Positions 1 through 14,741 of a stretch of 14,741 bases of DNA are shown piece by piece. The DNA lies in the NCBI RefSeq assembly GCF_006345805.1, contig NW_021825690.1:1-14741 (forward strand), in the 5' to 3' direction. The notes beneath the pieces are model-generated. The model did no database searches and was not told where the DNA came from. It saw nothing but the letters and a program-made list of their open reading frames with translations. Position numbers and translations under genes: made by a program. Source of the stretch: Octopus sinensis (taxonomy: Eukaryota). Positions within the stretch are counted from its first letter, which is position 1; each line of letters opens with the position of its first letter.

Positions 1-10
1 GCTTCTTCAG

Positions 11-72
11 ATGCCAAGATATCAAAAATTGTCCAAGTGTAGGACAATGGTTTAGCATTTTTCAAAAGTGTA
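11..72 (+). CDS. Candidate 62-bp internal coding exon (CQDIKNCPSVGQWFSIFQKC), first part of a possible CLIP-like Cys motif
   Basis: Acceptor ttcttcAG at 3-10 and donor GTAAGT at 73-78. Only one frame is open between them (phase 2 start, phase 1 end). Non-repetitive sequence. Upstream polypyrimidine context is cut off by the window edge. Confidence 0.5.
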
Positions 73-295
73 GTAAGTCCAAGAGATGACAGTTTTGCTA
101 AAATATTTCAGACTGAAAATATCATACATGCATGGAGTTATGATTTTATGCACTCAACAAAGTATTTATTGTTAAGCTGAAACTGTTGCTAATATAAAAA
201 GAGAAATAGAATGGTGAAACTAATTCTTCGTTTTCCGAAAAAGTAAAATTTTAGACTTATGATACTGTTGCATAATAGCAACAATATATCATTGT

Positions 296-410
296 TATAT
301 ATTTATGTATATATTTATGTGTATGTATGTGTGTATCTATATACGTTCGTATATGTGTGTGTGTGTATACATTGTTCATATATATATATTATATATATAT
401 ATATATATAT
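296..410. repeat. Compound (TA)/(TG)/(TATG) microsatellite
   Basis: Visible directly; source of the YIYI/VCVC junk ORFs at 259-514. Confidence 0.9.
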
Positions 411-413
411 CAA

Positions 414-557
414 GGTGCAGGAGTGGCTGTGTGGTAAGTAGCTTGCTTACCAACCACATGGTTCCAGGTTCAGTCCCACTGCATGGCACCTTCAGCAAGT
501 GTCTTCAACTATAGCCTTGTGAGTGGATTTGGTAGACAGAAACTGAAAGAAACCCAC

Positions 558-605
<48 letters not shown>

Positions 606-1358
606 CTATATATATTATATATATATTCATCATCATCGTTTAGCGCCGCTTTCCATGCTAGCATGGGTTGGATAGTTCAACTGGGGTCTGGGAGGAAGCC
701 AGAAGGCTGCACCAGGCCCAGTCTGATCTGGCAATGTTTCTACAGCTGGATGCCCTTCCTAACGCCAACCACTCCGTGAGTGTAGTGGGTCCTTTTTACG
801 TGCCAGATGAGCTGGCAAACGGCCACGATCGGATAGTGCTTTTTACGTGCCACCGGCACGGGGGACAGGTGAGGCTGGCAACGCACCGATCGGATGGTGC
901 TTTTTACGTGCCACCGGCACGAGGCCAGTTGGGGCGGCGCTGGCAACAGCCACGTTCGGATGGTTCTCTTACGTGCCACCGTCACTGGTATCACAGCTGC
1001 AATTTCCATTGATGTTGATCGATTTCGATTCTCACTTGCCTCAACAGGTCTTCACAAGTAGAGTTTTGTGTCCCAAGAAGGAAAGGTATGCATAAGGTAT
1101 GCATATATATATATATATATGTATGTATGTATGTATATCTTCGTGTTTGTGTGTGTATATGTGTTTGTCACCCAACATTGCTTGACAACCGATGCTGGTG
1201 AGTTTACGTCCCTGTAACTTATTGGTTTGGCAAGAGAGACCGATAGAATTAGTACTAGGCTTACAAAGAATAAGTCCTGGAGTTGTTTTACTTGACTAAA
1301 AGTGGTGCTCCAGCATGGCTGCAGTCAAATGACTGAAACAAGTGAAAGAGTGAGAGAA
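414..1358 (+). mobile_element. tRNA-derived SINE family A, copy 1, split by a nested family B insertion (5' half 414-560, 3' half ~1161-1358)
   Basis: Pol III A-box-like TGGCTGTGTGG and B-box-like GGTTCAGTCC. Both halves match the intact copies at 1414-1838, 5895-6310 and 11484-11926 and flank the B element. Confidence 0.85.
628..1096 (-). mobile_element. Family B copy 1: 5'-truncated RTE-like LINE 3' UTR (or SINE sharing that tail)
   Basis: (CAT)n tail at 628 = (GAT)n on the - strand; conserved box ggatgcccttcctaacgccaaccact; 4 internal subrepeats. RTE assignment rests on resemblance of the box/tail to RTE-clade 3' ends; no RT coding sequence is present. Confidence 0.8.
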
Positions 1359-1413
1359 TATATATATATATCATCATCATCGTTTAACGATGATATATAT
1401 ATATATATATATA

Positions 1414-1838
1414 GCAGGAGTGGCTGTGTGGTAAGTAGCTTGCTTACCAACCACATGGTTCCGGGTTCAGTCCCATTGCGTGGAACCTTGGGCAAGTGTC
1501 TTCTGCTATAGCCTCAGGCTGACCAATGCCTTGTGAGTGGATTTGGTAGATGGAAACTGAAAGAAGCCCGTCGTATATATGTATGTATATATATATATAT
1601 GCGTGTGTGTATGCGTGTTTGTGTGTCTGTGTTTGTCCCCCTAGCATTGCTTGACAACTGATGCTGGTGTGTTTATGTCCCCGTTACTTAGCGGTTCGGC
1701 AAAAGAGACTGATAGAATAAGTACTGGGCTTACAAAGAATAAGTCCCGGGATCGAGTTGCTCGATTAAAGGCGGTGCTCCAGCATGACCGCAGTCAAATG
1801 ACTGAAACAAGTAAAAGAGTAAAAAGAGTAAAGAGAGT
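1414..1838 (+). mobile_element. SINE family A, near full-length copy 2
   Basis: tRNA-like head, central cttgggcaagtgtcttc segment (CORE-like), internal TA/TG microsatellite, (GAGTAAAA)-type tail. Confidence 0.9.
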
Positions 1839-1910
1839 ACTCTGCCTTTGGTATTTGAGTATTATTTTCTCCACTTTGTTTTGTATCTGTGTGCTTAGTT
1901 GTGTGTTTAC

Positions 1911-2224
1911 TGCCGGTGACACGTAAAAAGCACCAAGCAATGTTAACTGATGCCAGTACCACTAACTGGCTCCTGTGCCGGTGGCACATAAGAAGTACCA
2001 TATGAACGTGATCATTGCCAAGCTCTCCTGGCTGGCTCCTGTGCCAGTACACGTAAAAAGCATCCACAACACTCTTGGAGTGATTGGCGTTAGGGAGGGT
2101 ATCGAGCTGTAGAAACTCTGCCAGAACAGGACTGGAGCCTGGTACAGCCACTGGCTCTCCAGATCTTAGTGAAACCTCCAACCCATGCCAGCATGGAAAA
2201 CGGATATTAATTGATGATGATGAT
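1911..2224 (+). mobile_element. Family B copy 2 (diverged)
   Basis: cacgtaaaaagcac subrepeats, degenerate box gattggcgttagggagggtatc, ends acccatgccagcatggaaaacgg...(GAT)n. Confidence 0.8.
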
Positions 2225-2243
2225 ATATATATATATATATAAA

Positions 2244-2425
2244 GTTAATCCAAATAAGAAAGCACAAAAAAACACAACGCGAGGACGTGGAACAAATATA
2301 GTATTATTGGATGCTCAGGAAAGAAGGAGGGCTTAATGTTTCGAGCGGAGCTCTTCATCGGAAACATAGGAGAAGGAAAGATCCAGAGAAGGGAAGACAG
2401 AGGAAAAAAATCGCCAACGGTACAC
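2244..2425 (-). mobile_element. Penelope-like element terminal-repeat fragment
   Basis: Carries a minimal hammerhead-like motif (ccgatgaagagctccgctcgaaac on -), typical of Penelope-like terminal repeats; abuts a (TA)n tract. No ORF. Confidence 0.55.
2331..2365 (-). ncRNA. Degenerate minimal type I hammerhead ribozyme motif
   Basis: - strand reads GUUU CCGAUGA A GAGC UCC GCUC GAA AC AU U AAGC: core CYGANGA/GAAA, perfect 4-bp stem II, stem I GUUU/AAGC. Deviations: U4>C and ACAU instead of palindromic ACGU. Confidence 0.55.
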
Positions 2426-2457
2426 CAAACCCGAGCAACGCCGGGCTGTACTACTCG
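2426..2457 (+). mobile_element. Isolated Helitron 3'-end stub (hairpin plus CTCG in place of CTAG)
   Basis: 31/33 identical to the reverse complement of 2483-2515; hairpin cccg-agcaacgc-cggg. Confidence 0.7.
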
Positions 2458-2483
2458 TATATATATATATATATATATATACA

Positions 2484-2864
2484 CTAGTAGTACAGCCCGG
2501 CGTTGCTTGGGTTTGTTTTCTTTTCGACCCTTTAGAATTGGAATTTTTGAAAAGTAAAAATTTTGCATCATGTAGCTTGTTATTCTCTTTAAGTGAACAT
2601 TTGTCTGGTCGAAATACAGCAGTCAAAAAAATCATAAAAAATAGAGATTTTCATAGAAAAAAAAAGCACCTTTTTGATGTAAATAATTTTTGGTGTTAAC
2701 ATGGTCCGATTTGAATTTTTTCTTGTACGTAATGAAGAGCAAGCCTTCTTCTATCATACTCTCAATTTTGGTCAACTTGCGCCGCAGGGTCTCGGAGGAG
2801 ATTGTGTTAGTTGAAAGCTACCAAACCTGCCACACACAGACAACTTCAGCTTTATATATAAAGA
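2484..2864 (-). mobile_element. Non-autonomous Helitron, 381 bp
   Basis: On - strand: A|TCTTTATATATAAAG...hairpin cccaagcaacgccggg...CTAG|T, i.e. TC/CTRR termini at an AT site with no TSD. Termini resemble the 7306-7820 element. Confidence 0.8.
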
Positions 2865-3033
2865 TATATATATATGCATATATATATGGATATATATATG
2901 TATATATACACACACACACATATATGTATATATATATATATATGTATATATACGTATATATATATACACACACACATATGTATATATGCATATATATACA
3001 CACACACTATATATATATGCATATATTTATATG

Positions 3034-3086
<53 letters not shown>

Positions 3087-3156
3087 CACACACATATATA
3101 TGCATATATAGTTATGTGCACATATATATATATATCTATACATATATGTATATATT
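2865..3156. repeat. Long compound (TA)/(CA) microsatellite
   Basis: Visible directly; source of ORFs 2690-3287. Confidence 0.95.
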
Positions 3157-3230
3157 TATTTTGTTTCTCCTTTTATAAAATCTTTTTCAATCACAGGCGA
3201 AACCTGAGAATTGGTCCATTTACACTGGCC

Positions 3231-3472
3231 ATAATAATAATAATAATAATGAATGATAATCTTTTCTACTATAGGCACAAGGCCTGAAATTCGGTAGGAG
3301 GGGGTCTCTTTGATTCCATCAACCCCAGTGTTCCACTGGTGCTTATTTCATAGACCCCGAAAGGATTCTAGGCTAAGTTGACCTCAGCGGAATTTGAACC
3401 CAGAATGTAAAGACAGATAAAATACCGCTAAGCATTTTGCCCTTGTGTATAATGATTCTACTAGCTCACCCG
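3231..3472 (-). mobile_element. tRNA-derived SINE family C (MetaSINE/Sauria-like central domain), diverged
   Basis: Reverse complement of the 8751-8957 copy; B-box-like gggttcaaattcc; (ATT)n tail at 3231-3250. Confidence 0.8.
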
Positions 3473-3595
3473 TTTTACGATCATTCTGTTGTATACTTGA
3501 AAAGGGTTCTCTTACGATCTCGGACCCCATTTTTTTACTTTCATTTTCACGGCCCTACCTGACACACTTCATTTTTTTCGTCTGTTCCCTAATTA

Positions 3596-3710
3596 TTGTT
3601 TGATGTTGTTGTTGTTGTTGTTGTTATTGATGATGATGATGATTATGATGATGATGATGATGATGTTGTTCTTGTTATTGTTGTTGTTGTTGTTGCTGCT
3701 CTGCCGCTCG
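3596..3710. repeat. (GTT)n/(GAT)n trinucleotide microsatellite
   Basis: Visible directly. Confidence 0.95.
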
Positions 3711-3762
3711 ATTTTTGTCTTGGCGTCCCACTGAAACAGTGTAGGGTTCAATCCCCCCGCAG

Positions 3763-3837
3763 GTACTCATTGTCAGGCTGTTCCGGACGCGCTACCGGTA
3801 CGACTCGTGGAGGTCGAAGACAAGACCGAAGAGATGA
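3763..3837 (+). CDS. Candidate terminal coding exon (VLIVRLFRTRYRYDSWRSKTRPKR*), product unknown
   Basis: Acceptor ttcaatccccccgcAG at 3762; in-frame stop just upstream (3742-3744); 19 of 24 codons end in G/C in an AT-rich window; (GAGAC)n starts at the stop. An alternative phase-1 frame is open to TGA at 3876-3878. Confidence 0.4.
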   Translation, partial: VLIVRLFRTRYRYDSWRSKTRPKR

Positions 3838-3952
3838 GACGAGACGAGACGATCCCCTGCCGCATCCATGTCGCGTGACGCCAACCCCAAACGCCTCTGC
3901 CGCTGCGCTAGCTTTGCTTCAACGGAAACAGACCGATCCTTTTGCGATTACC

Positions 3953-4200
3953 ACTGCTGCTGCTACTACTACTACTACTACTAATACTACTACTGCTGTT
4001 GCTGCTGCTACGACTGCGACCTCCAGTTCTGATGCTACTCCCATCGTCGCCACCACCACAACCACCACCACCACCACCACCACCATCATCGTCATCATCA
4101 TCATAGTCGTCATCGTCAGTTTGAGAACTGATGTCGCCGCTGCCGTCATTGCTGCTGCCGCTGCCAATGCTGCTTCTTCCCGCTTCTGCTACTGCTCCTG
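3953..4200. repeat. Mixed trinucleotide low-complexity tract (GCT/ACT/CAC/CAT), possibly 3' UTR
   Basis: Visible directly; explains poly-T/A/S/G/D/V ORFs on both strands. Confidence 0.85.
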
Positions 4201-4596
4201 ATGCGATTGATCCTGCTGTGAATGCCGTTACGATCATTTTATATCCTGTTTTCAATTCATTTGTACACACAAACACACACACAAACCTAATATAGAATGA
4301 TTTTTCGTCAGTTTTTTTTCCCTTTTGCCTGCGTGGTTTGTTTTCGAGTGCTTTGGTTTTTCTGGGAACTCCCTTTAAAGTAGAAGGAATAGCTAAGATT
4401 CTTTTTTACTGCTATTTCTAAAATTCGGTATGTGGTGAAGCAAGTCGTTGCTGAACCCTAATTATATAGTATCACACATACATATATGTATGTATCTATC
4501 TATCTATTTACACTTGGCGTATTTTATAAATATGCCTGCTCAATTATCATACTAGCATGAAACTATTAATAACTCTTTTGGTTGTATATTTAATTT

Positions 4597-5187
4597 CATC
4601 ATCATCATCATCGTTGTTGTTTAACGTCCGCTTTCCATGCTGGCATGAGTTGGACGGTTTGACTGAGGGCTGGCGAGCCAGAAGGCTACACCAGGTTCAG
4701 TCTGATCTGGCAAAGTTTCTATAAATGGATGCCCTTCCTAACGCCAACCACTACGAGAGTGTAGTGGGTGCTTTTACGTGATACCCGATTGAAGGCCAGT
4801 AAGGCGGTTCTGGCAATGACCACCACACTCAAAAGGTGTTTTTTACGTGCTACCTGCATGGGAGCCAGTCCGGCGGCACCGGCAACGACCACACTTGAAT
4901 GTTGTTTTTCACATGCCACCGGCACATGCGCCGGTAGGGCGACTCTGGCAGCGATTACGCCTGAATAGTGCTTTTCACGTGCCACCAGCATGGGTGCCAT
5001 TCCGTGGCCCTGGCAACGATCACCATCGGATGTGCTTTTGACGTTCCACTGGCACAAGTGCGAATCAGGTGGTACTGTCATTGGCCATGTCAGCAACTTT
5101 GATTTGTTTTCACTTGCCTCAATAGGTCTTTGCAAGCAAATTTCATTGTCCAATGAATGAGGGGTACTCATAAGTGGGCTGATACAT
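4597..5187 (-). mobile_element. Family B copy 3 (longest, 5 subrepeats)
   Basis: (CAT)n tail, conserved box at 4726-4752, extends through cacttgcctcaataggtc...taagtgggct. Confidence 0.85.
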
Positions 5188-5301
5188 GTGCAGGTACCAC
5201 TTAAAAGTGCAGGTACCACTTAAAAGTGCAGGTACCACTTAAAAGTGCAGGTACCACTTAAAAGTGCAGGTACCACTTAAAAGTGCAGGTACCACTTAAA
5301 A
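5188..5301. repeat. Perfect minisatellite, 6 x 19 bp (gtgcaggtaccacttaaaa)
   Basis: Units start at 5188, 5207, 5226, 5245, 5264, 5283 with no mismatches. Confidence 0.97.
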
Positions 5302-5320
5302 GACATCTGGTCCACAGTTA

Positions 5321-5765
5321 AGTGGTTGGTGTTAGGAAGGGCATCCAGCTGTAAAAACCTTCCCAAAACTGACCTCGCCTGTGCTTGTACCATGTAAAAA
5401 GCACTAAGTTCACTCTACTGAGTGGTTGGTGTTAGGAAGGGCATCCAGCTGTAAAGACCTTGCCAAAATTGACCTCGCCTGTGCTTGTGCCATGTGAGAA
5501 TCACTAAGTCCATTCAGCTCAGTGGTTGGTGTTCAGAAGGGCATCCAGCTGTAAAAATCCTGCCAAAACTGACCTCGCCTGTGCTTGTGCCATGTGAGAA
5601 GCACTAAGTTCACTCTGCTGAGTGGTTGGTGTTAGGAAGGGCATCCAGCTGTAAAAATCCTGCCAAAACAGTTACAAAAGCCTGGCGCAGGCTTCTGCCT
5701 CGCCGGCTCCACTCAAACCATTCCACCCATGCCAGCATGGAAGGTGGACGTTAAACGATGATGAA
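5321..5765 (+). mobile_element. Family B-related copy 4: three 100-bp tandem units plus a fourth running into the (GAT)n tail
   Basis: agtggttggtgttaggaagggcatccagctgtaaa recurs at 5321, 5421, 5521, 5621; ends cccatgccagcatggaaggtggacgttaaacgatgatga. Confidence 0.85.
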
Positions 5766-5894
5766 GAGATATATTCATGTATATATGTTGTGTGCATGTG
5801 TAAAATGTAATCACGGTACCACTTTCACATTTTTCCATTCCTTGTGCATGGACGTGTAAACATAGGCGCAGGAGTAAACATAGATGTAAACATA

Positions 5895-6310
5895 GGCGCA
5901 GGAGTGGCTGTGTGGTAAGTAGCTTGCTTACCAACCACATGTTTCCGGGTTCAGTCCCACTGCGTGGCATCTTGGGCAAGTGTCTTCTACTATAGCCTCG
6001 GGCTGACCAAAGCCTTGTGAGTGGATTTGGTAGACGGAACTGAAAGAAGCCCATCGTATATATGTATATATATATGTGTGGTGTGTGTGTGTGTATGTTT
6101 GTGCGTCTGTGTTTGTCCCCCTAGCATTGCTTGACAACCGATGCTGGTGTGTTTACGTCGCCGTTACTTAGCGGTTCGGCCAAAGAGACCGATAGAATAA
6201 GTACTGGGCTTACAAAGAATAAGTCCCGGGGTCGATTTGCTCAACTAAAGGCGGTGCTCCAGCATGGCCGCAGTCAAAATGACTGAAACAAGTAAAAGAG
6301 TAAAGAGAGT
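5895..6310 (+). mobile_element. SINE family A, full-length copy 3
   Basis: Complete ggcgcaggagtggctgtgtgg head, internal microsatellite and tail. Confidence 0.92.
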
Positions 6311-6410
6311 ATGCAACACAAATGTGTGTTTGTGTGTGTATCTGAGTGTGACTCTGTGTGTGTGTGTGTATGTGTGTTTGTGTATATGTATGTGTACATA
6401 TGTGTGTGAT
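6311..6410. repeat. (TG)n-rich microsatellite
   Basis: Visible directly. Confidence 0.85.
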
Positions 6411-6502
6411 GTTAAAATAATTATGCATTCCCATCATTGTTTTTAATTTGGTGTGTAATCTCTCCAGATTTTAATTGCTTCTGTAACGAGCATTGCAGAA
6501 TG

Positions 6503-7125
6503 TGAAGGTGGCTGTGTGGTGAGAAGCTTGCTTACCAACCACATGGTTTCGGGTTCAGTCCCACTGTGTGACACCTTGGGCAAATGTCTTTTGCTTTACT
6601 CTTGAGCTGACCAAAGCCTTGTGAGTAGATTTGATAGAAGGAAACTGAAAGAAGCCCATCATATATATAATATATATATGTATATATATATATTTATATA
6701 TATATATATATATGTATGTATATATCTATGTGTGTTTCTATGTTTGTCCCACCACCATCTCTTGACAACTGATGCTGGTGTGTTTATGTACCCGTAACTT
6801 AGCAGTTCAGCAAAATGGACCGATACAATAATAAGCTTACAAGGAATAAATCTGGGGTCGATTTCTTTGATTAAAACCCTTTAACCGTTTAGTGTTTAAA
6901 CTGACCAAATCCGGCCCAATATATTCTACATGTTTTATATTCAAACTGGCGATATCTAGCTTCTCACACCTAACCTACAATGCCATTCTAAAAATAAACA
7001 ATCACATCATTGAAACCTCAAAGCTGTAAGATAATCCAGGATTAATCCGAAACAATTTGAGTGAAAAAGTATTACATTTAACAGAGTAATCTGAACACTA
7101 AAGGGTTAAGGCGGTGCTCCAGCAT
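6503..7125 (+). mobile_element. SINE family A, older diverged copy 4, interrupted by a MITE
   Basis: Head ggtggctgtgtgg...gggttcagtccc; 3' part resumes as ggcggtgctccagcat at 7110 after the MITE. Confidence 0.85.
6885..7105. mobile_element. piggyBac-type non-autonomous MITE, 221 bp
   Basis: TTAA at 6881-6884 and 7106-7109 (TSD); TIRs ccgtttagtgtt / aacactaaaggg match at 11/12; removing it restores the SINE. Confidence 0.88.
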
Positions 7126-7305
7126 ATATCAAATTCTCTATGTAAAATTCCAATGCCGGTTCCTTCAGATGGTGCATTTTTGGTCAATTTCTTTCGTCTC
7201 CCCTCCGGTGTTACAATTTATTTCTGACTACTTAGAACGTAAAATACAATAAGGAGAACACGGAATTTGAACCTTCAAACTTTATGTTTACTTACAGTCG
7301 GTTTA

Positions 7306-7820
7306 TCTATATATATAAAACTGTAGTTGTGTGAGTGTCTGTCCCCTTCGATTTAGATTCCTAACTCCTCCCACATTTTGCGGTGCAGTTTAACCAAATT
7401 CGGGTATCTTATAGTCTTGATTCATATCGAGCCCATCTGGGTATTAGCGCGCGTCTACGATGAGTCTACGATTTTAAAAATAATTTAACATAATTTTTTA
7501 TTCCATTTTAATGCATAATTTCGTGTGTCGATGGCGGCGGAGTTGGCGTCCATGGTCACACCTGCACCTGTTTGCTTCTCTCCCCCTTCTTCCCTCCCTC
7601 ATGAAGCTGTGGGGAAGGGAGTTTAAGGAAATCAACGTCGTAAAGCGTTGTCAAGGAGACCAGCGTTCTTTTAGAACAACGACTTCATGGCTTGAAGACA
7701 CCAAAACAGAAGTGGCTAAGAAAGCCCGAATTGGCATCTATAAGGGAAGTAACTCTCTAAAAATGCTTATATAGTTATTTCCCTTACAACCCCGAGCAAC
7801 ACGCCGGGCGATACTGCTAG
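7306..7820 (+). mobile_element. Non-autonomous Helitron, 515 bp
   Basis: A|TCTATATATATAAAACTG...cccgagcaacacgccggg hairpin...CTAG|T. Confidence 0.85.
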
Positions 7821-7930
7821 TACATAATAATTGTCCGACACATTTTTCAATCGCATTAATTGCATATCTTGCATATTTTTATATGTAGCGATTTATGCAT
7901 TATAAGTATGATCTCTTCAGGGTCTATAAT

Positions 7931-8247
7931 CATCATCATCATCATCATCGTCATCGTCGTCGTTTAACGCCCATTTTCCATGCTAGCATGGGTTGGATGG
8001 TTCGACCGGGGTCTGGGAAGCTAGGAGGCTGCACCAGGCTCCAGTCTGATCTGGCAGTTTTTCTACAACTGGATGCCCTTCCTAACGCCAACCACTCCGT
8101 GAATGTAGTGGGTGCTTTTTACGTGCCACTGGCACAGGTGCCAGGAGACGCTGGCAATGGCTACGATCAGTTGGTGCTTTTTACGTGCCACCAACACAGA
8201 AGCCAGTCATGGTCATGCTAGCATAAGCCATGTTTGGATGGTGCTTT
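7931..8247 (-). mobile_element. Family B copy 5
   Basis: (CAT)n tail, conserved box, 2 full subrepeats and a partial one ending in (TA)n. Confidence 0.88.
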
Positions 8248-8449
8248 ATATATATATATATATATATATATCTAACACAAAACAGCATACATTACTATTA
8301 CATGCATATGGGTATATGGCAATATATACACATATATACATACAAATATATAATACAGTTGTGATAATAAATTGGGCATTTAAACAAATTTTGGATCCCT
8401 CCAATTGAGAAAACTCAGTCATACAACAAACTATAATCACTGGTGCAGT

Positions 8450-8620
8450 TCATATATATAAATCCATATATACAATATATATATATATATATATAATCCA
8501 TATATACAATATATATATATATATATATATATAAATCCATATATACAATATATATATGATAATACAGTATACAATATATACACACATATATATGTATGTG
8601 TGTGTGTGTGTGCACGTGTG
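8450..8620. repeat. (TA)/(TG) microsatellite with a triplicated aatccatatatacaata unit
   Basis: Unit at 8461, 8495, 8534. Confidence 0.85.
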
Positions 8621-8750
8621 TGTGTATTTCTCATTTAGTGTAGAGGAATATTATGTAAATATACTTTACATGATGTTTTTGTTGTGTTTAATAAACGTTG
8701 TTGTTGTTATTATTGTTATTATATTTTGTTATTATTATACACATATTTAG

Positions 8751-8957
8751 GGCAGCGAGCTGGTAGAATCGTTAGCACACCGGGCGAAATGCTTAGCGGT
8801 ATTTCGTCTGCCGCTACGTTCTGAGTTCAAATTCCGCCAAGGTCAACTTTGCCTTTCATCCTTTCGGGGTTAATAAGATAAGTACTAGTTATGCACTGGA
8901 GTCAATGTAATCCACAAGACCCCCTTCTCCCCAAAATTTTCGAGGCCTAGTGCCTAG
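8751..8957 (+). mobile_element. SINE family C copy 2
   Basis: tRNA-like head with B-box-like gagttcaaattcc, central gtcaactttgcctttcatcctttcgggg domain; tail truncated. Confidence 0.85.
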
Positions 8958-9110
8958 AATATATATATATATAGGAAAGAGGGTTTGAAACTGAAGAGGT
9001 CTTTTAGAGATACCGCTATATATATATAAAGGTAAAATGTAAAGCTTTTTATAAGCTTTGTTGTGTCAAAAAATGGTTATCATAATTGTATGAAAATACA
9101 GTTGCACAGT

Positions 9111-9713
9111 CTTTGTATGCTAGCATGGGTTGGACGGTTCAACTGGGGTCTGTGAAGCCAGAAGGCTGCATCAGGCCCAGTCTGATCTGGCAGTGTTTCT
9201 ACGGCTGTGCCCTCCTAACGCCAACCACTCCGTGAGTGTAGTGGATGCTTTTTATGTGCCACCCGTACAGGTGCCAGACGGAGCTGGAAAAACGGCCACT
9301 GGACAGATGGTGCTTTTTACGTGCCACCGCATGGGGGCCAGGCGAGGCTGGCAACGGCCATGAACAGATGGTGCTTTTTACGTGCCACCGGCACGAGGAC
9401 CAGGCGAGGCTGGCAACGGCCACGAACGGATGGTGCTACATGCCACTAGCACGGGGGCCAGGGGAGGCTGGCAACGGCCATGAACGGATGGTGCTACATG
9501 CCACTAGCACGGGGGCCAGGGGAGGCTGGCAACGGCCATGAACGTATGGTGCTTTTTACATGCCACCGGCATGGAGGCCAGTCGGGGCGGTGCTGGCAAC
9601 GGCCATAATCGGATGGTTCGCTTACTTATCACCGGCACTGGTATCACAGCTGCAATTTCCATTGATGTTGATCGACTTCGATTTTGGTTCTGCTTTCTGA
9701 TATCTGATTTGAT
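9111..9713 (-). mobile_element. Family B copy 6 (7 subrepeats, tail missing)
   Basis: Matches the other B copies; perfect internal 58-bp duplication 9424-9481/9482-9539. Confidence 0.88.
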
Positions 9714-9716
9714 ACG

Positions 9717-9760
9717 AAAATGTTATAAAAATGTTATAAAAATGTTATAAAAATGTTATA
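9717..9760. repeat. Perfect 4 x 11-bp tandem (aaaatgttata)
   Basis: Units at 9717, 9728, 9739, 9750. Confidence 0.95.
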
Positions 9761-10238
9761 AAATAGAATCTTTGACAAGGATAAGAAAATGTTAAATGGG
9801 GCTTTTTGTTTAAATAGTTTACATGAAAGTGTTCAAAATAGGTAGTAAAATAAATTTATAATTATTTTTTAAGTTCATCAAAAATCATGGTTGTATAGAT
9901 GTATATATACAGAAGGAATTATATTTAAGAATTTACACAGAATTTTAGATACACACACATATATACACACGAACACATTTACACATGTATATCAGCAAAT
10001 ATATACACATATCTTCTAACTTTCTTTCTGCCTCTAACTTACACACACACACACCACACTTGAATATACAAACACATGCACGTACATCCCACTTAATCTA
10101 TTGTTGCTATAACAACTAATCTCTGGTAATAGCAGCTTAACTAATCCCTCCTTGGACAATGACAAGTTAATCCATAGATACAGTAGCGAAATCTCTATTA
10201 AATCACACACACCCTACCATCTTAAATTAGGAAAAAAC

Positions 10239-10403
10239 ACATTACTCGATGTAGTCCTAGATACACTGTGCCAGTATAAAAGATTTGATGCTCACAAAAT
10301 TAGAACATCATTGATCATATGCTTGATAGATCTGGGTTAATCTAGTGCGAAACAACAAAAAGGAGGGATACATTAGATGATGTAATCCTAGGTACACTGT
10401 GCC
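10239..10403 (+). repeat. Imperfect 34-bp direct repeat pair, probably fragments of an old interspersed repeat
   Basis: 10239-10272 and 10370-10403 match at 29/34. Confidence 0.6.
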
Positions 10404-10499
10404 TGAATGACAGTGAGAGCACCTTTGAGTATAGGTCTGTCTGATCCTTGAAGAATTTCATTGAACAAATTATCTCCAGAATTTAATTTCTTTTTGAGC

Positions 10500-10680
10500 C
10501 TTATTCTATCAGTCCTTTATGCCAAACCGCTAAGTTGCAAGGATATAAACAAACCAACACTGGTTGTGAAGTGGTTTTTGGGAAACAAACACACACACAC
10601 ACACACAATTTTATATATTCTTTTCTCTTATTCTTTTATGTGTTTCAATCCTAAGGCTGTGGCCATGCTGGGGCACCACC
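10500..10680 (-). mobile_element. Two old family A fragments (internal part 10500-10606; tail 10620-10680)
   Basis: Reverse complements of cttagcggttcggcaaaagagaccgatagaataag and ggtgctccagcatggccgcag-like segments. Confidence 0.75.
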
Positions 10681-10719
10681 GATGTAATCACCTTTTCAAT
10701 GGCCAATTATATATATATA

Positions 10720-10860
10720 TTAGGTTGTCCCAAAAGTTCGTAAACACTTTCGAAAATTGAATTTTTACTCGCCAAGTACTAACAAAAACAACAAAAATTA
10801 TTCTTCAAAATAAAGACCATTATTTTCCAAGACATTCTACGAACTTTTGGGACAACCTTA
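10720..10860. mobile_element. Tc1/mariner-type MITE, 141 bp
   Basis: 23-bp TIRs (ttaggttgtcccaaaagttcgta) with 1 mismatch; TA on both sides inside a (TA)n tract; TTAGGTTG start resembles Hsmar1/MADE1-type ends. Confidence 0.88.
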
Positions 10861-10871
10861 TATATATATAT

Positions 10872-10940
10872 CCCTGAAAGTTTCAACTAAATTCATCCAG
10901 TGGTTCTTGAGATATCTTGTCCATGGACAAATAAACAAAA
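10872..10940 (+). mobile_element. Possible DINE-1/Helentron-like core fragment
   Basis: aagtttcaactaaattcatccagtggttcttgagatat resembles the core of such elements; no termini visible. Confidence 0.3.
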
Positions 10941-10945
10941 TAGGC

Positions 10946-11020
10946 CTTCTACTATAGACTTGGGCCAACCAAAGCCTCATCAGTGGATTTGGTAGATGGA
11001 AACTGAAAGAAGCTCATCGT
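10946..11020 (+). mobile_element. Family A 5'-half fragment (probable partner of 11931-12143)
   Basis: cttctactatag...gtggatttggtagatggaaactgaaagaagc followed by (TA)n. Confidence 0.8.
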
Positions 11021-11184
11021 ATATATATATATATATATATATAAATTAGAGATAAAACCTCTATTATGCAACTCAAACAGAGATAGAAATAAGCCAATAC
11101 ATAAAAAAAAAAATATATATTTTTATAAAACAAATAACTTATAACTAAATCTCAAAATGTATAAAATGAATTATCAATACTCCC

Positions 11185-11470
11185 TGGCCATTGCCAGCGC
11201 CGCCTTGACTGGCCTCCGTGCCGGTGGCACGTAAAAAGAACCGTCCGATTGTGGCCATTGCCAGCCTCGTCTGGCACCTGTGCAGGTGGCACATAAAAAG
11301 CACCCACTACACTCTCGGAGTGGTTGGCGTTAGGAAGGGCATCCAGCTGTAGAAACACTGCTAGATCAGACTGGGCCTGGCGCAGCCTTCTGGCTTCCCA
11401 GACCCCAGTTGAACCGTCCAACCCATGCTAGCATGGAAAACGGACGTTAAACGATGATGATGATGATGAT
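11185..11470 (+). mobile_element. Family B copy 7
   Basis: Subrepeats, intact box agtggttggcgttaggaagggcatccagctgtagaaac, (GAT)n tail. Confidence 0.9.
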
Positions 11471-11483
11471 ATATATACGTATA

Positions 11484-11926
11484 GGCGCAGGAGTGGCTGT
11501 GTGGTAAGTAGCTTGCTAACCAACCACATGGTTCCGGGTTCAGTCCCACTGCATGGCATCTTGGGCAAGTGTCTTCTGCTATAGCCCCGGGCCGACCAAA
11601 GCCTTGTGAGTGGATTTGGTAGATGGAAACTGAAAGAAGCCTGTCGTATATATGTATATATATATATAAATATATGTATATATATATGTGTGTGTGTATA
11701 TGTTTGTGTGTCTGTGTTTGTCCCCCTAGCAATGCTTGACAACCGATGCTGGTGTGTTTACGTCCCCGTTACTTAGCGGTTCGGCAAAAGAGACCGATAG
11801 AATAAGTACTGGGCTTACAAAAGAATAAGTCCCGGGGTCGAGTTGCTCGACTAAAGGCGGTGCTCCAGCATCGCCGCAGTCAAATAAATGACTGAAACAA
11901 GTAAAAGAGAAAAGAGAAAGAAAGAG
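11484..11926 (+). mobile_element. SINE family A, full-length young copy
   Basis: Complete head, internal microsatellite and tail. Confidence 0.92.
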
Positions 11927-11930
11927 TATA

Positions 11931-12143
11931 TGTTTGTGTATCTGTGTCTGTCTCCCCACCATCACTTCACAACCGATGCTGGTGTGTTTACGTCCCCGTA
12001 ACTTAGCGGTTCGGCAAAAAGGACAGATAGAATAAGTACTAGGCTTACAAAGAATAAGTCCTGGGGTCGATTTGTTCGGCTAAAGGCGGTGCTCCAGAAT
12101 GGCCGCAGTCGAATGACTGCGACAAATAAATGACTGAAAGAGT
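11931..12143 (+). mobile_element. Family A 3' half of an older copy
   Basis: Repeats the 3' half directly after the intact copy with different diagnostic bases (ccccaccatcac, gtaacttagc, aggcttac). Confidence 0.85.
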
Positions 12144-12171
12144 ACACTTCCAAAATGGGACTTCACCCATT

Positions 12172-12396
12172 TACAAATTTTCATCAAAAACTTCCGGGAC
12201 TGATGCTATAAAAAGAAAACCACAACACATAGTAATTCAGTATTTAATCTGCTTCAAAGTAGTCCCCCTCTGAAGCTACACCCTTTATCCCGGCACCCTT
12301 TTTTTTTCCATTGATGGAAGCATTCCTGAAACTCATTTTTTGGGGATAGTGAGTGTTGCATTCTCTCAGTTTTCTTCAATGTCTTGAAATCTCGTT
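12172..12396 (-). pseudogene. Mariner transposase C-terminal remnant with degenerate 3' TIR
   Basis: - strand translates, with frameshifts and one stop, as RFQDIEEN*ENAT / LTIPK / NEFQECFHQWKK / VASEGDYFEAD* (stop 12244-12246), matching the mariner C-terminal F..CF.QW..RW.KC+.S.G.YFE pattern; TIR-like sequence at ~12172-12202. Confidence 0.8.
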
Positions 12397-12554
12397 GGAT
12401 GGTCTTCCCCTGTGAAGACTGAGCCTTTGTTTACACACACACACACATATATACATATGGCTACCTCTGAAGAGCACAAGGTTACATAACTGGACTGTTA
12501 CCTTACACCCTGTTGAACACCTAGTGTGAAACCAATTGGTAAGCTCATCCATAT

Positions 12555-13082
12555 CATCATCATCATCATCATCATCATTTAGCGTCCGCTTTCCATGCTA
12601 GCATGGGTTGGACGGTTCAACTGGTGTCTGTGAAGCCAGAAGGCTGCATCAGGCCCAGTCTGATCTGGCCAGTGTTTCTACAGCTGGATTATGCGCTTCC
12701 TAACGCCAACCACTCCGTGAGTGTAGTGGGGCTTTTTTATGTGCCACCCGCACAGGTGCCAGGACGGAGCTGGCAAACGGCCACGGACGGATGGCTTTTT
12801 TTACGTGCCACCGGCACGGGGGCCAGCATGCTAGCAATGGCCACGAACGGATGGTGCTATGTTGCCACCGGCATTGGGGGGCCAGCGAGGCTGGCAACGG
12901 CCATGAACGGATGGTGCTTTTTACTGCCACCGGCACGGAAACCAGTCGGGGCGGCGCTGGCAACGGCCACGATCGGATGGTTCGCTTACTGTCAGGTCAC
13001 CGGCACTGGTATCACAGCTGCATTTCCATTGATGTTGATCGACTTCTCGATTTTGGTTCTGCTTTCTGATATCTGATTTGAT
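12555..13082 (-). mobile_element. Family B copy 8 (sister of copy 6)
   Basis: (CAT)n tail, box, 5 subrepeats, same 32-nt terminal sequence as copy 6. Confidence 0.88.
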
Positions 13083-13208
13083 TGTTTGAAAAATCATCCA
13101 TAATGGATATTGATATTGTACACTTCAATTAATATATGTGTGTATGTATATATATACTTTGATACTTTGATAGGTTTTGGCCATTATTGGCCCAGGCCAT
13201 GTCTAACT

Positions 13209-13227
13209 TAATAGCACCACCTGGTGC

Positions 13228-13232
<5 letters not shown>
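13209..13232. other. Perfect 11-bp inverted repeat (taatagcacca-cc-tggtgctatta)
   Basis: Arms 13209-13219 and 13222-13232 are exact reverse complements. Confidence 0.85.
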
Positions 13233-13257
<25 letters not shown>

Positions 13258-13258
<1 letters not shown>

Positions 13259-13664
13259 GCGCAGGAGTGGCTGTCTGGTAAGTAGCTTGCTAACCAACCA
13301 CATGGTTCGGGTTCAGTCCCACTGCGTGGCATCTTGGGCAAGTGTCTTCTGCTATAGCCCCGGGCCAACCAATGCCTTGTGGAGTGGATTGGTAGACGGA
13401 AACTGAAAGAAGCCTGTCGTATATATTAATATATATATATATGCGTGTGTGTTTGTGGGTCTGTGTGTTTCCCCCTAGCATTGCTTGACAACCGATGCTG
13501 GTGTGTTTACGTCCCCGTCACTTAGCGTTCGGCCAAAGAGACCGATAGAATAAGTACTTGGCTTACAAAGAATAAGTCCCGGGGGTCGATTTGCTCGACT
13601 AAAGGGGGTGCTCCAGCATGGCCGCAGTCAAATGACTGAAACAAGTAAAAGAGTAAAAGAGAGT
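13258..13664 (+). mobile_element. SINE family A, full-length copy with many 1-bp indels
   Basis: Same subfamily diagnostics as 11484-11926 (gctaacc, gccccggg, gcctgtcg). Confidence 0.9.
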
Positions 13665-13776
13665 ATATATATATATATGTATGTATACAGTCGCATGCAC
13701 ACACACACACACACACACAAACCAATTTATGCCATTTCATATAATATTGACACGCTTTCCTGGTTTTCACCCTCAG

Positions 13777-13840
13777 ATGAAGATGAAACTCAAGGAACAG
13801 TCTGCTGTGAAATCCTCGGAACCAAATGTAGGAACCGGAA
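13777..13840 (+). CDS. Candidate coding exon (xEDETQGTVCCEILGTKCRNR); 3' boundary uncertain
   Basis: Polypyrimidine acceptor ctttcctggttttcaccctcAG (13776), branch-like ttgac at 13747-13751, open phase-1 frame. Possible donors GTAGGA (13828), GTTAGT (13841) or GTGTGT further downstream. Confidence 0.5.
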
Positions 13841-13959
13841 GTTAGTTTACATAGAACAGGCGAACATTCGATCGGAACCATCACCTGATATTCCTTATGT
13901 CCGTGTGTCTGGTGGGAAGTGGCTTGCTATTCAGTTGTATATAGATTTCAAGATTTATT

Positions 13960-13974
<15 letters not shown>

Positions 13975-13992
<18 letters not shown>

Positions 13993-14741
13993 ATGTATGT
14001 ATGTATATATATAATATATATATATATGCTTAACTACATACATAAATTAACACACATATATATTTATATATATACCCACTTAAATTTATGTGTGTGTGTA
14101 TATATACATATATACCTATGTCTATAAGTAAAGTCTATAAAGATATGTTATATATATATATATATGTATATGTATGTGTGTATGTATGTATGTATATATA
14201 TATATATGCTTAACTACATATATAAATTAACACACATAGACACACACATATATATTTATATATATACCCACTTAAATTTATGTGTGTGTGTATATATACA
14301 TATATACCTATGTCTATAAGTAAAGTCTATAAAGATATGTTATATATATATATATATATATGTATATGTATGTGTGTATGTATGTATGTATATATAATAT
14401 ATGCTTAACTACATACATAAATTAACACACATAGACACACACATATATATTTATATATATACCCACTTAAATTTATGTGTGTGTGTATATATACATATAT
14501 ACCTATGTCTATAAATAAAGTCTATAAAGATATTTTATATATATATATATATATATATGTATATGTATGTATGTATGTATGTATATATTATAATATATAT
14601 GCTTAACTACATACATAAATAACAACATAGACACACACATATATATTTATATATATACCCACTTAAATTATGTGTGTGTGTATATATCCATATATACCTA
14701 TGTCTATAAGTAAAGTCTATAAAGATATGTTATATATATAT
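13975..14741. repeat. Tandem satellite of ~180-198-bp microsatellite-containing units, about 4 copies, runs off the window edge
   Basis: atgcttaactacata anchor at 14026, 14206, 14401, 14599; shared cccacttaaatttatg and cctatgtctataagtaaagtctataaagatat. Confidence 0.95.

What the first reader, a model, noticed from the sequence alone, without database searches (positions are those of the whole stretch)
11..13840. Two small exons 13.7 kb apart splice into a CLIP-domain-like cysteine motif
Seen: exon 11-72 ends in phase 1 and the acceptor at 13776 opens a phase-1 frame; joined they read CQDIKNCPSVGQWFSIFQKCNEDETQGTVCCEILGTKC. Known: CLIP domains have spacing C-x9-C-x5-C-xn-C-x7-9-CC, often with CP after the third Cys and VCC at the end; they are characteristic of arthropod immune/developmental protease cascades. 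This peptide has C-x5-CP-x11-C-x9-CC ending in VCC, with the first Cys expected in an upstream exon. Inference: the window is mostly one TE-filled intron of a CLIP-like secreted protein gene, which would be notable in a cephalopod. The C3-C4 spacing (12) is short and the join is my prediction.
Basis: partly seen in the sequence, partly recalled or inferred. Interest (0 to 1): 0.75.

Follow-up and report, generated by a model that had tools for sequence, protein, structure and literature searches.

The report
Unverified cysteine-rich exon pair in octopus
Two short, well-signalled open stretches 13.7 kb apart in repeat-filled octopus DNA join into a 42-residue, six-cysteine peptide that matches no known protein or domain, so they may be exons of an unannotated secreted-protein gene, but the CLIP-domain label is not supported.

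Summary
The sequence-level observation is correct. Segment 11-72 (cag|…|gtaagt) and segment 13777-13840 (ttttcaccctcag|…|gttagt) join in frame to CQDIKNCPSVGQWFSIFQKC-N-EDETQGTVCCEILGTKCRNR.

Both lie in unique islands of a window that is 64% interspersed repeats. These repeats are abundant in Octopus vulgaris, so the DNA is octopod.

Two cysteine-rich virtual exons on one strand are rarer than chance: 0.25% of simulations, and about 0.24 such loci per 14.7 kb strand of real O. vulgaris DNA, all repeat- or transposon-derived.

Nothing confirms expression or homology:
- No protein among 5.8 billion clusters, which include the O. vulgaris proteome, shares words with either segment in any frame.
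- No Pfam family or PDB chain matches.
- The exhaustive HMMER search gave only spurious repeat-protein hits.

The CLIP idea rests on cysteine spacing alone. That spacing does fit published manual criteria (C2-x5-C3, C3-C4 below 16, adjacent C5C6). Non-cysteine residues add nothing (4.4 bits against 1.8±3.0 for Cys-fixed shuffles). PF12032 does not match; this excludes a long-loop CLIP but not a short-loop one.

Together the segments span 126 nt, 42 codons with six Cys, in phase 2-2, so an upstream Cys is not required.

Verdict: plausible orphan cysteine-rich exon pair (about 45%), chance pseudo-exons (about 38%), CLIP (about 6%). Low interest until junction reads exist.

The parts
1..10 (+). 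Acceptor context of candidate exon 1 (gcttcttcag; AG at 9-10). Only 10 nt are inside the window.
   Evidence: Partial acceptor PWM score 8.1, comparable with the best 1% of AGs in the window.
11..72 (+). Candidate exon 1, 62 nt. Enters in phase 2 and leaves in phase 1. Reads (x)CQDIKNCPSVGQWFSIFQKC, with 3 Cys in 20 codons.
   Evidence: translation; only one frame is open. (unique island 1-290). (passes the virtual-exon thresholds).
73..78 (+). Donor GTAAGT of candidate exon 1.
   Evidence: PWM 5.9, ranked 33 of 976 GTs.
73..13776 (+). Putative 13,704-nt intron, mostly interspersed repeats and microsatellites.
   Evidence: No phase-1/phase-1 cassette candidate in its unique parts. No long TE ORF, tRNA or Rfam family.
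627..1026 (+). Copy of repeat family A (SINE-like, with internal 58-61-nt tandem subunits). Other copies: 1966-2224 (-), 4593-5032 (+), 7930-8245 (+), 9111-9713 (+), 11185-11470 (-), 12545-13082 (+).
   Evidence: 71-89% identity between copies. (61/58/60-nt subunits). (same family in O. vulgaris: 77 HSPs in 122 kb).
1391..1839 (+). Copy of repeat family B. Other copies or fragments: 391-586, 1103-1351, 5898-6311, 6508-6875, 10500-10606 (-), 10946-11046, 11469-11928, 11931-12144, 13236-13665.
   Evidence: 77-92% identity. (41 HSPs in 122 kb of O. vulgaris at about 88%).
13750..13776 (+). Acceptor context of candidate exon 2: possible branch site ttgac, pyrimidine tract ctttcctggttttcaccctc, AG at 13775-13776.
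   Evidence: PWM 8.5, ranked 7 of 715 AGs.
13777..13840 (+). Candidate exon 2, 64 nt. Enters in phase 1 and leaves in phase 2. Reads (N)EDETQGTVCCEILGTKCRNR, with 3 Cys. With exon 1 it totals 126 nt (42 codons, 6 Cys).
   Evidence: (unique island 13727-13929, between a family-B copy and a satellite)..
13841..13846 (+). Alternative donors follow 13827, 13911 (GTGGGA, best score) and 13986.
   Evidence: scores 3.9, 4.4, 7.5, 4.0.
13955..14741 (.). Tandem satellite downstream of candidate exon 2: 195-nt unit, 4.1 copies, 92% matches. It runs off the window end.
   Evidence: No copy in 122 kb of O. vulgaris.

Best explanation
The two segments are genuine small coding exons of an unannotated, lineage-restricted octopus gene for a disulfide-rich secreted or extracellular protein. 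They are separated by a 13.7-kb intron that has filled with octopus SINE-like repeats. Together they encode one self-contained 42-residue module with six cysteines (C-x5-C-x12-C-x9-CC-x6-C), bounded by phase-2 introns, which would form three disulfides.

What is shown: the sequence, the reading frame, the splice-like signals, the repeat content, the octopod origin, and the excess of Cys over chance.

What is inferred: that the segments are transcribed, that they are spliced to each other, and that the product is secreted. The module is not demonstrably a member of any described domain family, including CLIP.
For: - The frame is open across the join, and exon 1 has only one open frame.
- The acceptors rank in about the top 1% and the donors in the top 3-10% of sites in the window.
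- At those thresholds, these two are the only virtual exons in unique DNA on the + strand.
- Both sit in unique islands tightly bracketed by repeats. Neither island matches anything in 122 kb of O. vulgaris DNA, so they are not unrecognised repeats.
- Cys density is 3 in 20 codons for each segment. The background is 3.5% of open 20-codon windows.
- Two Cys-rich virtual exons appeared in 0.25% of simulations.
- Real O. vulgaris DNA gives only 4 such loci per 244 kb of strand, all low-complexity or transposon sequence.
- 62+64 = 126 nt, so the pair is frame-neutral and carries an even number of Cys.
- No competing phase-compatible cassette exon exists in the unique parts of the interval.
Against: - No protein in 5.8 billion clusters shares three 5-residue words with the 42-residue peptide. 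No protein matches any other frame of either island. That collection demonstrably holds the annotated O. vulgaris genome GCA_951406725.2.
- No Pfam family and no PDB chain matches.
- The exhaustive HMMER search of 1.84 billion representatives with the exon-2 ORF gave only spurious multi-repeat hits outside the Cys part.
- Splice-like signals of this strength are common by chance.
- Exons of 62 and 64 nt are short, and the donor of exon 2 is ambiguous.
- Thresholds and the Cys criterion were chosen after the fact.
Confidence: 0.45

Rival explanations
1. Chance pseudo-exons. The window is non-coding, repeat-rich intronic or intergenic octopus DNA. The two segments are decoy splice-site pairs whose open frames happen to be Cys-rich.
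For: - 47.5% of simulated 4.9 kb sequences contain at least 2 virtual exons at the same thresholds.
- Real O. vulgaris DNA has about 5.9 virtual-exon loci per 14.7 kb strand.
- No annotated or predicted protein covers either island in any frame, although the O. vulgaris proteome is in the collection.
- There is no domain, structure or homologue match.
- In a clip profile the non-Cys residues behave like shuffled sequence.
Against: - Two non-repetitive Cys-rich virtual exons on one strand with compatible phase are rare: 0.25% of simulations, 0.035 squared from the empirical window frequency, and no non-repeat example in 244 kb of real octopus strand.
- The composition is protein-like, not low-complexity.
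- The pair is frame-neutral at 126 nt.
Confidence: 0.38
2. The two exons encode Cys2-Cys6 of a short-loop (group-1-type) clip domain, plus the linker Cys, of a secreted serine protease or protease homologue. Cys1 and the signal peptide lie upstream and the S1 domain lies downstream.
For: - C2-x5-C3 is exactly five residues, C3-C4 is 12 (<16, group 1), and C5C6 are adjacent after a hydrophobic residue. These match the manual criteria in PMC1761132.
- The same paper describes a linker Cys that pairs with the catalytic domain, which could explain the Cys after CC.
- The Cys arrangement scores above 97% of full shuffles in a 5-sequence clip profile.
- Pfam cannot exclude short-loop clips.
Against: - There is no PF12032 or other clip-family hit, even with 8 tandem copies. 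Four real clips truncated at Cys2 score 32-49 bits.
- Non-Cys residues add nothing: 4.4 bits against 1.8±3.0 for Cys-fixed shuffles, with 19% of shuffles scoring at least as high.
- Clip proteases are reported only from arthropods (PMC7911326).
- The two exons already hold an even six Cys in a frame-neutral unit, so no upstream Cys is needed.
- No O. vulgaris protein contains the peptide.
Confidence: 0.06
3. Only the downstream segment is a real exon, and it is used differently. One option is a first coding exon read from the ATG at 13777 (MKMKLKEQSAVKSSEPNVGTG…). Others are the longer 13777-13911 form, or an antisense exon at about 13771-13908. In each case 11-72 is unrelated or untranslated.
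For: - A second frame is open through 13777-13840 and starts with ATG directly after the acceptor.
- The donor after 13911 scores best, at 7.5.
- An antisense virtual exon overlaps the same island, with acceptor 7.6 and donor 4.9.
Against: - None of these alternative readings matches any protein in the collection.
- The extended ORF found only spurious hits in the exhaustive search.
- The alternative frame is not Cys-rich, so this reading leaves the coincidence with exon 1 unexplained.
Confidence: 0.08

Closest known systems
CLIP (clip / disulfide-knot) domain of arthropod serine proteases, Pfam PF12032
   Same: - Five residues between two Cys.
- A loop of fewer than 16 residues to the next Cys.
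- Nine residues, then a hydrophobic residue and an adjacent CC.
- A further Cys where clip proteases carry a linker Cys.
(real clips.)
   Different: - No profile match.
- No sequence similarity beyond the Cys positions.
- The first Cys, the signal peptide and the protease domain were not seen.
- The host is a cephalopod, whereas clip proteases are described from arthropods.
- Six Cys already lie within a frame-neutral two-exon unit.
Other small six-cysteine extracellular modules with a C-C-C-CC-C order (trefoil/P-domain, PLAC) or a terminal CC (beta-defensin / big-defensin C-terminal domain); patterns recalled from memory
   Same: About 40 residues with six Cys including one adjacent pair. The opening C-x-D resembles the start of PLAC and ShKT modules.
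   Different: The individual spacings differ: trefoil is C-x9-C-x9-C-x4-CC-x10-C, and PLAC ends CC-x2-C. None of these Pfam families appears even as a weak hit.
Octopus SINE-like interspersed repeats as found in Octopus vulgaris assembly GCA_951406725.2
   Same: Families A and B in the window match 77 and 41 segments in 122 kb of O. vulgaris at 77-89% identity. ORFs across family A match O. vulgaris 'hypothetical predicted proteins'.
   Different: I did not classify them formally. No tRNA head was detected by ARAGORN or Rfam. The species of the window was not established.

Membership tests
CLIP domain (PF12032) | Six Cys with Cys5 and Cys6 adjacent (PMC1761132) | tested here: inconclusive
   An adjacent CC is present, with three Cys before it. 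The first Cys would lie in an upstream exon outside the window.
CLIP domain (PF12032) | Exactly five residues between Cys2 and Cys3 (PMC1761132) | tested here: met
   C-QDIKN-C. The criterion was read.
CLIP domain (PF12032) | Cys3-Cys4 spacing below 16 (group 1) or about 23 (group 2) | tested here: met
   Twelve residues, PSVGQWFSIFQK, which is within group 1.
CLIP domain (PF12032) | Significant match to the family profile | tested here: not met
   - No hit at E<=10 for the peptide, its extended form or 8 tandem copies.
- Controls truncated at Cys2 score 32-49 bits for four long-loop clips.
The test is therefore decisive only against long-loop clips.
- Home-made profile: 4.4 bits, no better than Cys-fixed shuffles.
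CLIP domain (PF12032) | Lies N-terminal to a trypsin-like (S1) protease or protease-homologue domain, behind a signal peptide | not testable with these tools
   Flanking exons are outside the 14.7 kb window. The locus could not be extended.
Trefoil / PLAC / ShKT / defensin-type six-Cys modules | Match to the family profile | tested here: not met
   None of these families is listed, even with 8 tandem copies at E<=10. No positive control was run for these families.
Expressed protein-coding exon pair | Presence in a transcript, annotated protein or homologue | tested here: not met
   No protein shares words with either exon or with other frames. The collection contains the annotated O. vulgaris genome. 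RNA-seq reads are not available in these tools.
Octopus interspersed repeat families | Multiple dispersed copies in the window and in an octopus genome | tested here: met
   About 8 and about 10 copies in the window. 77 and 41 HSPs in 122 kb of O. vulgaris.

The most novel reading that the evidence does not exclude
The pair encodes the Cys2-Cys6 part of a short-loop clip domain in an octopus protease-cascade gene. That would be a clip domain outside arthropods, missed by current annotation because its tiny exons lie in very large repeat-filled introns.
Probability: 0.06. Interest if true: 0.6.

Novelty: new member of a known kind. Interest (0 to 1): 0.2.

Why it matters
If the exons are real, they mark an unannotated, apparently lineage-restricted gene for a small disulfide-rich protein in an octopus. 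They would also show how 60-nt exons can be lost to annotation inside repeat-filled introns of more than 10 kb.

If the product were a true clip domain, it would extend a module tied to arthropod immune and developmental protease cascades to cephalopods. The present evidence does not carry that claim.

As it stands this is an ordinary, unverified gene-prediction lead.

Tried and rejected
- **Pfam scans.** I scanned the joined peptide, its extended form and an 8x tandem construct. There were no relevant families. The tandem trick produced only irrelevant families (DUF4112, zf-TAZ) and also failed for a real short-loop clip control, so I give it no weight.
- **PDB sequence search:** nothing.
- **Word-indexed protein search of the joined peptide:** no candidate.
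- **Composite of all other reading frames of both islands:** 526 candidates, none at E<=1.
- **Exhaustive HMMER search.** I did not work around this. I searched the contiguous exon-2 ORF instead. Its six hits are bacterial or repeat proteins that match 'P-I-P-Y-V-x-V-x-G-G' several times each. Their E-values are inflated by the repetition and none covers the Cys part.
- **Degenerate DNA scans of JGI metagenomes for each exon:** 0 hits. The search for related loci rejected the 20-residue query as too short.
- **Exact look-up of ten window ORFs, to extend the locus:** none is in the collection.
- **Literature string search for the peptide:** 0.
- **Six-frame Pfam scan by DNA reference:** I inspected stop-to-stop ORFs instead; there is no long TE ORF.
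- **tRNA and Rfam scans:** nothing at threshold.
- **GGTTCAATCCC motif at about 3745.** I took it for a possible tRNA B box. The region gave only a sub-threshold nematode snoRNA match.
- **SRCR idea.** I briefly considered that 'VRVSGG' after exon 2 might start an SRCR domain. I dropped this because there is no Pfam hit.


Full report
**What is in the sequence**

- The window opens with gcttcttcag. A 62-nt stretch at 11-72 follows, and then gtaagt.
- At the far end, ctttcctggttttcaccctcag ends at 13776. A 64-nt stretch at 13777-13840 follows, and then gttagt.
- Only one frame of 11-72 is free of stops. It leaves one base over, and with the first two bases of 13777 this makes AAT.
- The join reads CQDIKNCPSVGQWFSIFQKC-N-EDETQGTVCCEILGTKCRNR. 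The spacing C-x5-C(P)-x12-C-x9-CC is as stated, and a sixth Cys follows six residues after the CC.

- The second segment has another open frame that begins with ATG right at the acceptor (MKMKLKEQSAVKSSEPNVGTG).
- It has alternative donors after 13827, 13911 and 13986. The one after 13911 scores best in a crude position-weight matrix.
- 62+64 = 126 nt, so the pair is a frame-neutral unit of 42 codons, phase 2 to phase 2, holding an even six cysteines.

**Surroundings and origin**

- A self-comparison shows that 64% of the window is repeated within itself, 3% is simple sequence and 33% is unique.
- Two interspersed families account for most of the repeats. Family A has internal 58-61-nt tandem subunits and about 8 copies at 71-89% identity. 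Family B has about 10 copies or fragments at 77-92% identity.
- There are also microsatellites, a 100-nt and a 19-nt tandem array, and a 195-nt satellite at the 3' end.
- There is no long transposon ORF, no tRNA and no Rfam family.
- Both candidate exons lie in unique islands, 1-290 and 13727-13929. The second island is squeezed between a family-B copy and the satellite.
- An ORF read across a family-A copy matches six 'Hypothetical predicted protein [Octopus vulgaris]' entries at 63-96% identity.
- Both families are abundant in six 20-kb pieces of the O. vulgaris assembly GCA_951406725.2, with 77 and 41 matches at 77-89% identity. Neither exon island nor the satellite matches there.

The window is therefore from an Octopus or a close relative. 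'TE-filled' is a fair description of the interval.

**Is it more than chance?**

I scored every AG and GT with a generic metazoan matrix.
- The acceptor at 13777 ranks 7th of 715 and the partial acceptor at 11 is comparable. The donors rank 33rd and 95th of 976.
- At thresholds just below these values, the only virtual exons in unique DNA on the + strand are these two.
- Such signals alone are not unusual. 47.5% of second-order Markov simulations of 4.9 kb contain two or more virtual exons. Real O. vulgaris DNA has about 5.9 loci per 14.7 kb strand.

What is unusual is the cysteine content.
- At least 3 Cys in 20 codons occurs in 3.5% of open 20-codon windows in the rest of the window's unique DNA.
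- Two Cys-rich virtual exons occurred in 0.25% of simulations.
- In 244 kb of real octopus strand, the only four Cys-rich virtual exons were a tandem repeat, a microsatellite-like stretch and what looks like a transposon segment.
- No phase-compatible cassette exon is evident in the unique parts of the interval.

The thresholds were chosen after seeing the data, so I treat this as moderate, not strong, evidence that the segments are real Cys-rich coding exons.

**Searches for expression or homology: all negative**

- The word-indexed search of 5.8 billion protein clusters found no protein sharing three 5-residue words with the 42-residue peptide.
- A composite of every other reading of both islands gave nothing at E<=1.
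- This collection demonstrably holds the annotated O. vulgaris genome. An annotated orthologue of reasonable identity should therefore have been found.
- The contiguous exon-2 ORF gave six hits. All are repeat proteins matched several times on a 'PIVPYLQVNGG'-type motif outside the Cys part, which is a summation artefact.
- The PDB search, two metagenome DNA scans, ten exact ORF look-ups and a literature string search found nothing.

**The CLIP hypothesis**

Published manual criteria for clip domains (PMC1761132):
- six Cys with Cys5 and Cys6 adjacent;
- exactly five residues between Cys2 and Cys3;
- Cys3-Cys4 below 16 (group 1) or about 23 (group 2);
- a linker Cys that pairs with the catalytic domain.

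The peptide fits these for Cys2-Cys6.

That is the limit of the support.
- Pfam gives no family at E<=10 for the peptide, its longer form or eight tandem copies.
- As positive controls I truncated genuine clip domains at Cys2. They score 32-49 bits on PF12032.
It is missed when truncated or tandemised. The profile test therefore excludes a long-loop clip but cannot exclude a short-loop one.
- In a five-sequence home-made clip profile the peptide scores 4.4 bits. Shuffles that keep the Cys positions score 1.8±3.0, and 19% reach the real value. Full shuffles score -1.3±2.6, and 2.6% reach it.
- 'CP after Cys3' occurs in none of the five clips compared.
- Clip proteases are described as arthropod-only in PMC7911326. 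This lowers the prior and would raise the interest if the claim were true.
- The defining context (upstream Cys1, signal peptide, downstream S1 domain) is outside the window.

**Most likely explanation**

I think the best reading, at about 45%, is a real pair of small exons. They would belong to an unannotated, lineage-restricted gene for a disulfide-rich secreted protein. They would encode one self-contained six-Cys module that belongs to no described family.

The main rival, at about 38%, is a pair of decoy splice sites whose frames are Cys-rich by coincidence. The absence from the O. vulgaris proteome is the strongest argument for it.

A short-loop clip domain (about 6%) and a different use of the downstream exon (about 8%) remain possible.

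**Novelty and interest**

Small orphan cysteine-rich genes and large repeat-filled introns are both ordinary in cephalopod genomes. Without junction reads or conservation this is a gene-prediction lead, not a discovery. Interest is 0.2.

The decisive tests are locating the islands in the public octopus assemblies, counting junction reads, and recovering the full transcript. None of these is possible with the tools available here.

Noticed in passing
window 8041-8230 vs 11185-11374; 4601-4775 vs 11296-11470; 694-805 vs 11287-11398: Family-A repeat copies lie in opposite orientation within the same putative intron, with arms of 110-190 nt at 84-95% complementarity. If transcribed they could pair into long double-stranded RNA, the kind of substrate used by RNA-editing enzymes, which are very active in cephalopods. 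This is speculation.
   Followed up: no
window 13955-14741: A 195-nt-unit tandem satellite (4.1 copies, 92% matches) starts about 115 nt after candidate exon 2 and runs off the window end. No copy was found in 122 kb of O. vulgaris DNA.
   Followed up: partly
window 5188-5302 and 5321-5669: A perfect 19-nt tandem array (6.1 copies, 100% matches) lies directly next to a 100-nt tandem array (3.5 copies, 89% matches) built from family-A-like sequence in reverse orientation. This looks like recent local amplification inside a repeat copy.
   Followed up: no
window 811-985, 9246-9588, 12776-12938: Family-A copies carry different numbers (2.7 to 5.6) of an internal 58-61-nt tandem subunit, so the element has a variable minisatellite core.
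   Followed up: partly
window 3596-4282: A GC-richer block (about 45%) has runs of trinucleotide repeats, (GTT)n, (GAT)n, (ACT)n, (ACC)n and (ATC)n, flanking a unique core. It gives low-complexity ORFs of 201 and 124 aa on opposite strands. The core contains GGTTCAATCCC, which resembles a tRNA B box, but no tRNA was found and Rfam gave only a sub-threshold snoRNA match.
   Followed up: partly
L001-L006 (O. vulgaris GCA_951406725.2), gene at 10001-103xx in each: The O. vulgaris annotation contains single-exon 'hypothetical predicted proteins' of 103-137 aa that are simply ORFs across family-A repeat copies. These are annotation artefacts that inflate the proteome.
   Followed up: partly
window 7562-7606 (- strand): This is the best-scoring virtual exon in the whole window by the crude matrix (acceptor 11.6, donor 8.5, 45 nt, two open frames). 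It lies on the opposite strand in unique DNA. No protein evidence was sought for it.
   Followed up: no
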